From the NCBI RefSeq assembly GCF_963853765.1, contig NC_088859.1, positions 21,390,001 through 21,454,000 on the forward strand: 64,000 nucleotides of DNA, in the 5' to 3' direction. A program made the translations under genes and the position numbers. Positions 19,543 to 31,262 of this stretch are shown here, in pieces. Each line of letters opens with the position of its first letter. Position 1 is the first letter of the stretch. Origin of the DNA: Magallana gigas (Eukaryota). The notes below the pieces were generated by a model, which was not told the DNA's origin, did no database searches, and saw only the letters and a program-made list of their open reading frames with translations.

Positions 19543-22500
19543 ATGGACACACCCGGTACCAGTTCATCGTCAGACAAGGAAAGGTGAGGTTCTTCTGAGA
19601 TTATTGGTGTTGACTTCTTAGAAGAACACCCGTGAAATGATCTCATTTTCCTTTGTTGCATTCTGTGTTATTATTCTCAGGAATTGATGTTTATTTTGAG
19701 CACATCTTCATCTGATTATTTTGTAGATGAAATAATTTTTTTCTTGAATATTTAGAATGGAGGCTGCAGAGACTGCCATTACTATGTTGGCGCAAGGAAA
19801 GCGCAACATGGTGTGTGGAGAAATTCCAAATGCAGTAAACCAGTTTCAGGAAGCATGCAAAGTTCTGTGAGTTGTCTTGACTTACACTGTCAGCTGTCCT
19901 AAGCTTTTCTTAGTCTTTAAAGAACAAATGATCTGATATTTATTGACATGACAAACTGGTCTCTTGATCTGCCCAAGAAATCTTTAGTTTCAAAATCCAA
20001 GGGTACACCACCAACATTACTGAAAATGTAATTGAAATTTAACTTTTAATTGTGAAACTGGTAATTGTAAATGATCTTGGTCAAATATATAGACATTTAC
20101 CATTGTTATATTTGGTAGTAAATTCTCACTATACAACTCTACATCGACAAATAGTCAATAATTGTAATATTGGCTCGTCCGAAAAATAATGACCGGTCAA
20201 TATTTTTTTAATATTGACCGGCTAGGTATAATATCTAGAGAATATTCCCCTTATTTCAATTAATCGCCTCTGATTTGTTGATTGGTAAACGATGACGTAA
20301 ATAACTCTTCGCGACTCCAAAACAAGGTGACGTCATAATAAGCAATCAGTCAAGGCAAGTAAACCACGAACGCGCAATGCGGCGGTTTGCTATCATAACG
20401 TGTATATGGATTTGCGAATTTTTGTGAAGTAATTCAGGTAAAACATCTTTAGCTTAGTTCCTATGGACGGTGGAATATCACCAGTGACCTTTTGATGCCA
20501 ACGATGTTTTGGAAATGAACTTTGCGCAAAATTGAATTCTATGTTGAGCCGAGAAAATTACGGCGATCTGTTTTCAAATCCTTTCTTGATTTTTGGTTTG
20601 TTTCTTCATATAACAAAACAAATGTTGACTGCATTTTCGGACAACAATGATTATATTAGCCCTGTTGGGACGAATATATTGCCCTCTGCTTCGCGTCGGG
20701 CAATATTTCGTCCCTCGGGGGCTAATATAATCAATGTTGCCTTCAACCCCAGTCAATATTTGTATAATGTTTAATATTGTGGTTCTTCTATCACCATGCA
20801 TTGCTTCCTTTCATTACTCCATTCCCACTGTTTGGTCTCGGTGAATTCATAACCCAAGGTGACCACTGGTCAACTTTTCTGTCAAATGAGGATGATTTGG
20901 TCTCATACTTTTTCAATTTTCAAGGAATTCTAAATAGAATGAACAGGGAATTTTCAATATTTTCAAATAACTGGGCATTTCAAAATTTAATCAAGTATTC
21001 ATTGCTTTGATACTGTACTCTGTGTTTTAAACTTTTTGAAAAGTTGAAACACTGTGTTTGCATTATAAATGTTAATTTCTCTGCAATTGAATTGGTAATA
21101 TTTTGTCAACATTTTGAAAAAACAAATTTTGTGATCAGAGGAAGGTAACTATATGGTGTCAATTAAAGAAGAGAAACAAATGTAAATTGAAAGGTATCTT
21201 GAAAATGATTACCAGTTTTTGAAACATAGGGAAAAAGCTAACAAAGAGCTATGGAAGCAAGTATTTAGTTTCAAGTTGATACTCGGTAGTCACAATGTAT
21301 TGGGACAACAGATATTTGATACGCATGCTTTCAATAAGTCCACATTTTATGTTTTATTTTAAATAACTCCTTGTAAGCAGCTTTTTAGTATAAAAAATAT
21401 TTGAATTGTAGAGCAAAGGCCTATGGAGAAACGGCCAAAGAATGTGCAGAAGCATATTTCTATTATGGCCAGTCACTATTGGATCTTGCCAGAATGGAAA
21501 CGGGTGTGCTAGGGAATGCTCTACAGGGAGGTTTGTACTGATAGAACTTATTCAATAAGATTGTAGGAGTGGATAGTTCTTAGTTTTGAAATTCTGCTGT
21601 GGTAAATGGTTGCTAGTGAACCTATGTGTGAAGTATGTTTACTAATATCTAGTAAGTGTACTAGTGTGCATTATTGTAGATATGGTTTTTCATTTGGTAT
21701 GTGGCTTTTAAAGCAGTTTCGTTATGTTCATCTTCTCATTGGGGCATGAAGGGATGTTTATTGCTGTAAAAGATCAAAGGTTTTGAGGTTCATACTACGT
21801 TCTAGTAACTTTCAGTGTGTCAATATATAAAAAATGGAGGAAAGGTGTGAAATTAAGAGGGCGTTACATTTACTGCATGTTCTTGAATAGGTAAAAAATA
21901 AATTGTCCAAAAAGTATCTTCCAATCTTTGTATGCTCTTTTAAATGTCTGTGGAATTTATGGCACTTTCAGTCTTCAGTGATTATATTATAACATTGGTT
22001 GTGGAGGGGGAACAAGTAATTTATTAACTTGTCTGCAATGTGGGATTGTGATTGTAGTTCCAGAGGAGGAAGAGACAGAAGAGGATAGTAAGCCCTCTGA
22101 ACAGTTTGAGCCAGTCGAGTTAAATGGTGTGTGGCTTACTTTCATTATTAAGAAACTAAATGGCTACTTGATGTCAGATTTTTAGTTTATTTTGCATAAT
22201 GTATGAAATGTTCAAAGGTTTCAAAAGTATCTGTTAAGTTATACAACTTGCTTGTTAGGAGAAGACCGGGAAAAACTTCGAATGGAAGTGTATGATGCTA
22301 TGTCAGAAAATAAAGAGGGTGCTAAGGAGGAGGGAAAAGAATGTGAGAAAAAGGAGGGGAAAGATAAGATGGAAACGGATGATGAGAAAAGCAAGAAGGA
22401 ATCTGAAAAAGATGAGAGCAAGAAGGAATCTGAACAAGATGAGAGCAAGAAGGAATCTGAAAAAGATGAGAGCAAGAAGGAATCTGAACATGAGAAAAGC

Positions 22501-30384: not shown

Positions 30385-31262
30385 CCAGCAGGTGTTAGAT
30401 ATATAAATATCCAACTGATAGGAGTTGGATATTTTTAATATCCAACCATCAATCAGTTGGATATTCAAATATCCAACAGGGCATTAAACAAAGAAAACTG
30501 AAAAAAATATTGAAACGTGTATTTCCAATATAAATCCAAATTTATAAAACAGAATTTTGTCATCCATAAATGTATATCCGATAAGCCACGAATAATTGTT
30601 TTGCAGAACTATCTCCTTTTCTTAATTTTGATAGATTCGGGATCACATATAAATCACTTTCATAAACTTTTAGATTTCCTCTTTGAACCTTGAACCATAT
30701 CACTCCTTCTAATTATTTTAACAATATAGGAAATATTGTCGCACTATGACTTCATAAGACTCCTATCAATTTTTTAGATAAACCATCGTCTGTTAATTGA
30801 CGTCAAAATTTAGATTTTTCCTTTCTCCTTGCAAGTTTTAAAATATCATGCATTCAAACAGTATCCATGTTTTTCCAGGAATTGTGGATCTCTATATACA
30901 TTGTACAAGTGTGTACTTTGCGTTAAAAAATTCATCTTCTAAATCTATGTCTGCTCAGTACAGCGGTATGGTTTTCTATAACATGCGCACCTGTTCACTC
31001 GTCCATGATTAAAAAGGTGTGTTTGGTTAGGCTATTGTGTATGGTATTGCTGGAATTTTACCTTTGTATGACATCACAGTTGGATATATGAATGGGTCAA
31101 TGCTTCTTAGAGGCTCAAATGGGGGAATTTTTTTAAGTAAGATAAATAACTCGATAGTGTTGAATAGTTTAGAGAAAACATCCCCTCCTCGGGCCTTCGG
31201 CCCTCGGAGGGAATGTTTTCTCTAAACTATTCAACACCATCTCGTTATTTATCCATTACTTA
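30385..31262. mobile_element. Third hairpin-ended element, with an alternating inverted-repeat array at its left end
   Basis: AATATCCAAC/GTTGGATATT five times in alternating orientation (30412-30478). Hairpin 31141-31253 with tip TC-GGGCC-TTC-GGCCC-TC. That both ends belong to one element is inferred. Confidence 0.55.

What the first reader, a model, noticed from the sequence alone, without database searches (positions are those of the whole stretch)
20643..31253. Long DNA hairpins with unrelated arms but one shared tip architecture (TC-stem-TTC-stem-TC)
Seen: three long palindromes whose arms share no sequence all close with the same tip. 20643-20738: CCC-TC-TGC-TTC-GCG-TC-GGG. 29925-30066: CC-TC-CGC-TTC-GCG-TC-GG. 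31141-31253: CC-TC-GGGCC-TTC-GGCCC-TC-GG. Each has a symmetric TC/TC internal loop, a GC mini-stem of variable length and a TTC triloop. A 12/13 match (TCCGCTTCGAGTC) also sits in a short stem at 18051-18071 (-). Inference: a conserved shape with unrelated arms points to a protein-recognised ssDNA/cruciform signal, such as a resolution or nicking site for a tyrosine-recombinase (Crypton-type) or HUH enzyme, shared by several non-autonomous families that lack TIR+TSD ends.
Basis: partly seen in the sequence, partly recalled or inferred. Interest (0 to 1): 0.75.

Follow-up and report, generated by a model that had tools for sequence, protein, structure and literature searches.

The report
Shared cap on transposon terminal hairpins
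Three long DNA hairpins in this oyster window are the end pieces of three families of small jumping genes with unrelated hairpin arms that all carry the same tiny, strand-specific cap, which is probably the folded signal that their mobilising enzyme reads.

Summary
Such caps are about 200 times commoner in the window than in shuffles.

Each palindrome is the 3' end of a non-coding interspersed repeat. Family A is about 373-384 bp, B 672 bp and C 935 bp. Two further families, D and E, have the same build. Three cap variants give about 3,000 genome copies, yet the arms show no detectable homology.

All five families begin with 9-24 nt that is the reverse complement of the sequence just before the palindrome. 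None makes a target-site duplication.

On the opposite strand the cap reads as the very stable GCGAAGC/CCGAAGG DNA mini-hairpin flanked by tandem G.A pairs (a canonical CGAG block in two of the three cap variants). Nearly every non-Watson-Crick position in the arms becomes G.A or G.T on that strand. Cap orientation is 97% fixed.

No Helitron-type Rep gene sits next to any listed cap. Three family-D-type caps lie about 1 kb downstream of a tyrosine-recombinase exon. I therefore favour Crypton-type derivatives (about 0.55) over non-autonomous Helentrons (about 0.3).

This scan had already noted Crypton hairpins with this cap elsewhere in this genome. The 18051 site is a different repeat.

The parts
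20102..20771 (+). Family B non-autonomous element (about 670 bp)
   Evidence: Homology to other copies begins at 20101/20102 and ends at 20771-20773.
20103..20111 (+). Family B 5' subterminal inverted repeat (TTGTTATAT)
   Evidence: Reverse complement of 20608-20616. Only 4 of 500 shuffles match as well.
20608..20616 (+). Family B 3' subterminal inverted repeat, 1 nt before the palindrome
20618..20763 (+). Family B 3' palindrome. Cap at 20683-20699 and TTC triloop at 20690-20692, with one CpG-to-TpG change in this copy
29698..30070 (+). Family A non-autonomous element. The unit is 373 bp by the head-to-tail junction; alignments to other copies start between 29687 and 29698
   Evidence: Head-to-tail junction 30067 to 29695 seen in four runs.
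29698..29707 (+). Family A 5' subterminal inverted repeat (TTGTTATACT)
   Evidence: Reverse complement of 29914-29923.
29914..29923 (+). Family A 3' subterminal inverted repeat, 1 nt before the palindrome
29925..30067 (+). Family A 3' palindrome (70-nt arms). Cap at 29988-30004, TTC at 29995-29997, and a second C-TC-G / C-TC-G module in the arms
30325..31259 (+). Family C non-autonomous element (935 bp). The insertion is absent from an allele seen in four public runs
   Evidence: Joint 30329 to 31286.
30325..30336 (+). Family C 5' subterminal inverted repeat (TTAAAAAACTTC)
   Evidence: 11 of 12 complementary to 31125-31136. Only 2 of 500 shuffles match as well.
30393..30478 (+). Internal palindrome near the 5' end of family C, conserved in other copies
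31125..31136 (+). Family C 3' subterminal inverted repeat, 4 nt before the palindrome
31141..31253 (+). Family C 3' palindrome (55-nt arms). Cap at 31188-31207, TTC at 31196-31198, and an outer C-TC-G module. The 6-nt tail CATTAC follows at 31254-31259
17976..18249 (+). Not part of the system: a separate interspersed repeat of about 260 bp that holds the 18051-18071 stem

Best explanation
The three hairpins are the built-in 3' ends of three non-autonomous families (A, B, C) of one group of DNA transposons that make no target-site duplication. Every member has the same end plan. It starts with a 9-24 nt sequence that is the reverse complement of the sequence just before the palindrome. Then comes a family-specific body, then a 113-146 nt palindrome, then a 3-8 nt tail. 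The arms can be any sequence. The cap is kept. The cap is meaningful on the strand complementary to the element's sense strand. There it is a C-GAA-G mini-hairpin on a 3-5 bp G+C stem closed by a tandem G.A block. The same G.A blocks, together with G.T wobbles, account for almost all imperfections in the arms. I read the palindrome as a signal used in folded, single-stranded form. The cap nucleates and marks the fold. In a circle or head-to-tail junction the two complementary element ends would pair and lengthen the stem. The mobilising enzyme would then recognise shape rather than sequence. The enzyme is most likely a Crypton-type tyrosine recombinase, by analogy with integron attC sites. Shown here: the families, their boundaries and end plan, the absence of target-site duplication, the strand asymmetry, the 97:3 orientation bias, one empty allele, and the linkage of a family-D-type hairpin to a recombinase gene. 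Inferred: folding in vivo, recognition of the cap, and which enzyme moves families A, B and C.
For: Repeat families and boundaries. The 5' end is complementary to the base of the palindrome in 5 of 5 families, each with at most 7 of 500 shuffles matching as well. No target-site duplication. An allele lacking family C, at a T^T site, appears in four runs. The arms are unrelated. The cap comes in only three variants that differ by paired changes, CGC/GCG, GGC/GCC and GGGCC/GGCCC. There are no 4-bp-stem forms. Consensus hairpins on the TTC strand have 9 tandem TC/CT modules, 3 single T.C, 5 A.C, 1 G.T and 1 G.G. On the other strand these become G.A and G.T pairs. The other strand also folds slightly better even without special bonuses for these motifs. 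GCGAAGC and CCGAAGG are documented ultra-stable mini-hairpins used at single-strand replication origins (PMC13037366). CGAG blocks of tandem sheared G.A pairs are documented (PMC10085684). Cap orientation in family A is 1,414 to 46. Three exact 20-mer caps lie 0.96-1.0 kb downstream, on the same strand, of Phage_integrase and DUF3504 matches on two chromosomes. By my arithmetic about 0.03 such cases are expected by chance. Two of the three have family-D arms with a private, fully paired variant. No Helitron_like_N hit sits upstream of any listed cap. Earlier notes of this scan reached the Crypton reading on other DNA; they are leads, not support.
Against: The recombinase link is by coordinates only, rests on three loci, and concerns family D, which is not in the window. 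Their 5' ends are therefore unknown, and the gene could be cargo. No recombinase was found near the listed subsets of family A, B, C or E caps. The end plan is also the published plan of non-autonomous Helentrons. Intact Helentron-like Rep genes abound in this genome. Published Cryptons are described as lacking inverted repeats and as having 4-6 bp terminal direct repeats (PMC3212892). I saw no consistent direct repeats of that kind. Families within a cap type may share the cap by descent, so the count of independent cases is small.
Confidence: 0.55

Rival explanations
1. The elements are non-autonomous Helentrons (HINEs), moved by a Rep/helicase with an HUH nuclease. On this reading the long palindrome is an overgrown version of the short 3' stem-loop that ends rolling-circle transposition, and the cap is the part the machinery reads.
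For: The plan matches the HINE definition point for point: a 5' subterminal inverted repeat within 0-3 nt of the 5' end, its complement before a 3' palindrome, no target-site duplication, AT-rich targets, and one T^T empty site. Head-to-tail copies are common. The genome holds at least 150 Helitron_like_N hits, many in open frames of 2,600-2,900 codons. In the reconstructed Helitron Helraiser, swapping the hairpin stem kept about 90% activity, whereas changing the loop was as bad as deleting the hairpin (PMC4778049). That is the same pattern of free arms and a fixed tip.
Against: No Rep hit lies within 15 kb upstream, on the same strand, of any listed cap. The one apparent case was a nested high-copy non-autonomous element. 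Known HINE palindromes are 5-20 bp, not 113-146 nt. None of A, B or C carries a microsatellite or central tandem repeat. If Helraiser's rule holds, the stable GAA/GA fold is on the strand that is not transferred (PMC5876387). A recombinase gene, not a Rep gene, is the one found beside this cap.
Confidence: 0.3
2. The cap has no function of its own. A short ancestral 3' hairpin served as a fold-back primer, so that whatever lay upstream was copied into a new right arm. The cap is then a frozen remnant shared by descent.
For: This explains unrelated arms around an identical cap, and why the palindrome starts right after the 3' inverted repeat. Only three cap variants exist. Copies are young, 96-99% identical.
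Against: Fold-back copying gives perfect arms. It cannot create C-TC-G opposite C-TC-G, which needs two transversions per module, and at least five such arm modules in four families (A, B, C, D) with unrelated arms all point the same way. The cap variants differ by paired changes that keep the mini-stem. Orientation is held at 97%. This idea may explain the origin of the arms, but not the upkeep of the cap.
Confidence: 0.1
3. The palindromes are genes for hairpin RNAs (microRNA or siRNA precursors), or they are ordinary foldback or inverted-repeat MITEs of a cut-and-paste transposase.
For: They fold like long microRNA precursors. Several Rfam microRNA models give weak matches. RNA runs hold most words of family A.
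Against: All Rfam matches are far below the gathering scores (39 against 92 bits at best). The palindrome is at one end only, of a longer asymmetric unit. There are no terminal inverted repeats at both termini and no target-site duplication. Copy numbers run into the thousands. RNA contigs are expected for any intronic repeat.
Confidence: 0.05

Closest known systems
HINE / DINE-1-type non-autonomous Helentrons, including the Cg_HINE elements of the Pacific oyster (PMC4067079, PMC7492417)
   Same: 5' and 3' subterminal inverted repeats, a palindrome after the 3' repeat close to the 3' end, no target-site duplication, AT- or T-rich targets, head-to-tail copies, high copy number.
   Different: The palindromes here are 113-146 nt rather than 5-20 bp. 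They carry a conserved cap with G.A modules. There is no microsatellite or central tandem repeat. No Rep-encoding partner was found, and the only coding partner found is a tyrosine recombinase.
Crypton DNA transposons (tyrosine recombinase; PMC3212892)
   Same: No target-site duplication and no long terminal repeats. A recombinase of the Phage_integrase/DUF3504 type lies about 1 kb upstream of a family-D-type hairpin in three loci. Head-to-tail junctions fit a circular intermediate.
   Different: Published Cryptons are described without inverted repeats or hairpins, and with 4-6 bp terminal direct repeats. I saw no such repeats. The link is not shown for the window's own families.
Helitron 3' hairpin (Helraiser; PMC4778049, PMC5876387)
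   Same: A hairpin near the 3' end acts as terminator. Experimentally, the stem sequence is free and the loop matters.
   Different: The canonical 5' TC, 3' CTRR, A^T target and 16-20 nt hairpin are all absent here.
Integron attC sites and the CTX phage attP hairpin
   Same: Works alike: a tyrosine recombinase reads one folded strand of an imperfect palindrome. Shape and unpaired or odd pairs, not sequence, give recognition and strand choice, and the arms differ between sites.
   Different: Those are bacterial, with palindromes of 60-140 nt without a GAA cap. There is no evidence of common descent. The analogy is not tested here.
Mini-hairpin DNA GCGAAGC / CCGAAGG and CGAG blocks (PMC13037366, PMC10085684)
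   Same: On the complementary strand, two caps contain GCGAAGC and the third contains CCGAAGG. Two caps and the arm modules are C-GA-G opposite C-GA-G.
   Different: Those motifs were studied as oligonucleotides, phage or plasmid origins, and a human promoter, not as transposon ends. The commonest cap has C-GA-C opposite G-GA-G, which is not the ideal context.

Membership tests
HINE (non-autonomous Helentron) | Subterminal inverted repeats of about 11-15 bp, the 5' one within a few nt of the 5' end | tested here: met
   9-24 nt repeats, 0-1 nt from the 5' end, in 5 of 5 families.
HINE (non-autonomous Helentron) | Short palindrome between the 3' inverted repeat and the 3' end | tested here: inconclusive
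   The palindrome is in the right place but is 113-146 nt instead of 5-20 bp.
HINE (non-autonomous Helentron) | No target-site duplication; insertion between T and T | tested here: inconclusive
   No duplication in 40 distinct flank pairs. The one empty allele fits T^T, but with 14 unread letters at the joint. Family E 3' flanks start with A in 14 of 16 copies.
HINE (non-autonomous Helentron) | Autonomous partner encoding Rep/helicase with the same termini | tested here: not met
   150 Helitron_like_N hits. None is upstream of a listed cap. Regions downstream of four Rep frames show no such cap belonging to them. The lists are partial.
Crypton | Autonomous copies encode a tyrosine recombinase and no other transposase | tested here: inconclusive
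   PF00589 and PF12012 matches lie 0.96-1.0 kb upstream of three caps, two of them with family-D arms. The loci could not be read. No link was found for A, B, C or E.
Crypton | Short (4-6 bp) direct repeats at both termini, no inverted repeats | tested here: not met
   No consistent direct repeats. Short inverted repeats are present.
Canonical Helitron | 5' TC, 3' CTRR, insertion between A and T, 16-20 nt hairpin 10-12 nt from the end | tested here: not met
   The termini are TTGTT... or TTAAAA... at the 5' end and ...ATA...ATT or ...TAC at the 3' end.
Foldback / inverted-repeat MITE | Inverted repeats at both termini plus a target-site duplication | tested here: not met
   The palindrome is at one end only, and there is no duplication.
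Known RNA families (Rfam 15) | Match at the family's gathering score | tested here: not met
   The best match is 39 bits against a threshold of 92.
Mini-hairpin DNA motif | GCGAAGC or CCGAAGG sequence; unusual thermal stability | tested here: inconclusive
   The sequence is met on the complementary strand in all three caps. Stability cannot be tested with these tools, because the nearest-neighbour folding used has no term for it.

The most novel reading that the evidence does not exclude
Eukaryotic tyrosine-recombinase transposons (Cryptons) use as their recombination site one folded DNA strand. The site would be a long hairpin nucleated by a GAA mini-hairpin, punctuated by tandem G.A blocks, and lengthened by pairing of the element's two ends. 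This would be a eukaryotic counterpart of integron attC. It would also mean that thousands of oyster repeats with a HINE-like plan are Crypton derivatives rather than Helentron derivatives.
Probability: 0.35. Interest if true: 0.85.

Novelty: new variant of a known kind. Interest (0 to 1): 0.65.

Why it matters
Nobody knows what DNA site Crypton recombinases act on, and the role of Helentron end structures is untested. These elements offer a precise candidate that can be made as an oligonucleotide. It is a 15-20 nt cap whose two strands should behave very differently, set on arms that can be any sequence, and it is present in about 3,000 young copies, at least one of them still polymorphic.

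The candidate makes several questions testable: strand choice, recognition of folded DNA and end pairing.

It also matters for annotation. These hairpins resemble microRNA precursors and Helitron-type repeats, and could be filed as either.

Finally, 110-150 nt near-perfect palindromes are prone to deletion and inversion, and both are seen here, so the elements bear on genome stability.

Tried and rejected
- A DNA search with the palindrome as query found nothing, not even itself. I used exact patterns instead.
The census is therefore limited to the window and the flanks of fetched loci. There, all three palindromes in the window with arms of 50 nt or more have the cap, and one more capped family (E) turned up by chance.
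- I tried to link the caps to Helentrons. I read 10 kb downstream of three related Rep frames and the 12.6 kb between a Rep frame and a cap. These regions hold kilobase tandem repeats, an unrelated 210-nt palindrome with another loop, and a nested high-copy non-autonomous element. No link was found.
- Caps with 4-bp mini-stems do not exist as families.
- Non-family-E copies of the third cap are not near recombinase hits. The same holds for family-C-type caps, apart from one at 3.8 kb.
- A metagenome scan for the recombinase-linked cap variant was blank. A look-up of earlier findings by sequence was also blank.
- Rfam gave only sub-threshold microRNA look-alikes.
- I rejected canonical Helitron, inverted-repeat MITE, SINE (no tail, no promoter boxes sought) and assembly artefact. 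The artefact is ruled out because the copies are present in contigs of four independent runs.
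Full report
**Observation.** The window is AT-rich (about 33% G+C). It lies in a 564-Mb, 29-contig genome that public runs label as oyster.

Family A spans 29925-30067 and family C 31141-31253. The stated 20643-20738 is the inner part of a longer imperfect palindrome, 20618-20763 (family B). In B the mini-stem has T where other copies have C, a CpG decay private to this copy.

As single strands, all three fold far better than shuffled sequence (z -11.6 to -22.7). The strict cap pattern occurs twice in the window, against 0.01 per dinucleotide shuffle.

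**What the palindromes belong to.** Exact-pattern searches of the whole genome gave the following counts.

| Cap | Copies | Control |
|---|---|---|
| 17-mer cap of A and B | 2,557 | 0 |
| 20-mer cap of C | 119 | 0 |
| Third cap, found by chance in a flank | about 340 | 9 |

Flanks of 80 fetched copies sort into five families. A and B share the first cap. C and a new family D share the second. A new family E has the third. The left arms of the five families show no pairwise similarity beyond shuffles.

In each family, homology between copies runs several hundred bases to the left of the palindrome and stops 3-8 nt to its right. The palindrome is therefore the 3' end of an asymmetric unit.

| Family | Unit size | Window coordinates |
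|---|---|---|
| A | 373-384 bp | 29687/29698-30070 |
| B | about 670 bp | 20102-20771 |
| C | 935 bp | 30325-31259 |
| D | about 595 bp | not in window |
| E | about 700 bp | not in window |

None has a long open frame.

**End plan.** In all five families the first 9-24 nt of the unit is the reverse complement of the sequence that ends 1-4 nt before the palindrome.

| Family | 5' repeat |
|---|---|
| A | TTGTTATACT |
| B | TTGTTATAT |
| E | TTTGTTTTC |
| C | TTAAAAAACTTC (11 of 12 complementary) |
| D | a 24-nt repeat |

Each is matched by at most 7 of 500 shuffles. Forty distinct pairs of flanks show no target-site duplication, and the targets are AT-rich, often (TA)n.

Contigs of four public runs were laid on 28800-32300. 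In all four, an allele joins 30329 to 31286, so family C is missing there. The joint fits insertion between T and T in AAAAATT^TTAAACC. However, 14 letters at the joint were not shown to me, and the empty allele is 7 nt shorter than expected on the right. The 3' boundary at this locus is therefore good only to about 25 nt.

The same runs hold head-to-tail A-A junctions (30067 to 29695, three ambiguous letters). These put the unit at 373 bp, with the 3' tail abutting the 5' repeat. They also hold many deletions inside the A palindrome.

**Anatomy of the cap.** I built consensus hairpins from the copies. Written on the element's sense strand, the non-Watson-Crick positions are:

- nine tandem TC-opposite-TC modules, each closed by C-G pairs: one at each cap and one or two more in the arms of A, B, C and D;
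- one more such module decayed at a CpG;
- three single T.C;
- five A.C;
- one G.T;
- one G.G.

On the complementary strand these become tandem G.A, single G.A and G.T. That strand's hairpin has almost nothing but pairs that DNA tolerates. The cap there reads C-GA-(3-5 bp G+C stem)-GAA-(stem)-GA-G.

Two caps contain GCGAAGC and the third contains CCGAAGG. [quoted passage not shown] It resists nucleases and SSB, and it occurs at single-strand initiation sites of phage G4. CCGAAGG sits in ssiA of RSF1010 (PMC13037366). C-GA-G opposite C-GA-G is the CGAG block of tandem sheared G.A pairs (PMC10085684). The commonest cap has the less ideal C-GA-C opposite G-GA-G.

Standard nearest-neighbour folding has no term for these motifs. 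Even so, it favours the GAA strand by 0.8-4.1 kcal/mol.

The three caps differ by changes on both sides of the mini-stem (CGC/GCG, GGC/GCC, GGGCC/GGCCC). Forms with a 4-bp stem do not exist as families.

**Orientation.** I anchored a pattern on the family-A body and counted cap orientations. TTC lies on the sense strand 1,414 times and GAA 46 times. In the 46 inverted copies the break lies at different depths in the arms. Most have also flipped the inner G.A module, about ten have not, and a few have flipped a mismatch further out. These look like occasional inversions by exchange between the arms, not a regular flip-flop. One inverted copy each was seen in the samples of A, C and E.

**Which enzyme.** My first reading was non-autonomous Helentron (HINE). 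The plan is the published one: subterminal inverted repeats, a 3' palindrome, no duplication and T-rich targets (PMC4067079; PMC7492417). The genome also has at least 150 Helitron_like_N matches, many in frames of 2,600-2,900 codons.

I could not link the two. No Rep hit lies within 15 kb upstream, on the same strand, of any listed cap. The sequence downstream of four Rep frames held tandem repeats and unrelated elements.

Earlier notes of this scan then turned up. They state that long hairpins capped c(GAA)g with tandem G.A pairs are the built-in 3' end of oyster Cryptons. I treated them as leads and tested them by coordinates.

DUF3504 and Phage_integrase searches place a recombinase C-terminal exon 0.96-1.0 kb upstream, on the same strand, of three exact 20-mer caps: C5:22312797, C5:50497005 and C7:19443781. 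By my own arithmetic, about 200 recombinase loci, a 1.2-kb one-strand window and 119 caps give about 0.03 such cases by chance. Two of the three carry family-D arms with a private variant that turns a T.C mismatch into a pair.

The recombinase gene's sense strand is the TTC strand, so the GAA fold is on the template strand.

For caps of A, B, C and E, the listed subsets show no recombinase nearby.

**Mechanism (inferred).** The arms vary freely. The cap, the end pairing and the strand bias are kept. That is what one expects of a site read as a folded single strand.

In a circle or head-to-tail junction, the 3' repeat, the palindrome, the short tail and the 5' repeat follow one another. The two repeats can then pair and extend the hairpin stem past a small bulge. 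This gives two inverted binding arms around the joining point.

The known working model, from my own knowledge of the field, is a tyrosine recombinase acting on one folded strand of an imperfect palindrome, as with integron attC and the CTX phage.

If the enzyme is instead a Helentron Rep, the closest precedent is Helraiser. There a stem swap kept about 90% activity and a loop change equalled deletion of the hairpin (PMC4778049). In Helraiser the transferred strand is the top one (PMC5876387). That would place the stable GAA fold on the template strand, perhaps as a block to synthesis at the element's end.

Fold-back priming from a short ancestral hairpin may explain how unrelated arms arose. 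It cannot make the G.A modules.

**Comparison and novelty.** Both candidate superfamilies are known, and oyster HINE-like repeats are published. The library I searched does not describe palindromes of 113-146 nt at this position, a cap shared across families with unrelated arms, its identity with mini-hairpin DNA and CGAG blocks, or the strand bias.

- A search for Helitron together with GCGAAGC gave nothing relevant.
- The Crypton survey mentions no hairpins.
- Two HINE supplements hold the cap words only inside tandem-repeat monomers or not at all, although the table of Cg_HINE palindromes was illegible.

The same feature had been noted by this scan on other DNA of this genome.

**Limits.**

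- Cap lists show only the first 100 places of each search.
- The recombinase link is positional.
- Only five families were sampled.
- Consensus sequences were used only for these non-coding repeats and only inside scripts.
- No typed long sequence, spliced model or masked stretch was involved.

Noticed in passing
window 17976-18249: An interspersed repeat of about 260-275 bp (308 first-look candidates) with an internal short hairpin that in most copies reads CCGC-GAA-GCGG. This is another C-GAA-G mini-hairpin, here on the plus strand and not at an element end.
   Followed up: partly
L051:7919-8128 (G000 C6:3586318-3586527): A 210-nt palindrome with a different loop (CTTGTAATT), preceded by AACAAAAG, which resembles the 3' repeats of families A, B and E. 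It lies 4.3 kb downstream of an intact Helentron-like frame. It is absent from two related copies, so it is probably a separate element.
   Followed up: partly
L051:4035-6377, L082, L083: Helentron-like elements with Rep frames of 2,700-2,860 codons carry tandem repeats with a period of about 1.1-1.6 kb right after the frame. Repeat number differs between copies.
   Followed up: partly
L042 (G000 C2:17841288-17844307): A family C copy in which the body is inverted relative to the palindrome, with the 5' repeat taking the place of the 3' repeat, as if the two subterminal repeats had recombined.
   Followed up: no
L040, L049, L050, L056, L075: In several D and E copies the distal arm of the palindrome is cut short and replaced by a (TA)n microsatellite. 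Many E copies sit inside (TA)n tracts.
   Followed up: no
window 22384-22524 and 23047-23166: In-frame 27-nt and 18-30-nt tandem repeats rich in GAG/AAG codons, inside a stretch of strong G-over-C skew (20-24 kb). This looks like a Glu/Lys-rich coding exon between family B and family A.
   Followed up: no
window 31608-32075 and 28917-29033: Two further very high-copy repeats beside families A and C. Summed contig depth is tens of thousands at 31608-31958, falling to several thousand by 32075, and about 1,000-5,700 at 28917-29033, against about 10-30 for unique flanks. There are internal deletions and a recurrent 21-nt insert at 31854/31693.
   Followed up: no
window 12668-12749 and 59206-59235: Inverted G-run and C-run pairs (13-15 nt homopolymers facing each other).
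   Followed up: no
G000 C8:34072262 and C1:49536619: Family C caps with a variant (CATTCCC) that turns the arm's C.A mismatch into a pair. This parallels the fully paired variant of the recombinase-linked family D copies. No recombinase or same-strand Rep hit is nearby in the lists.
   Followed up: partly
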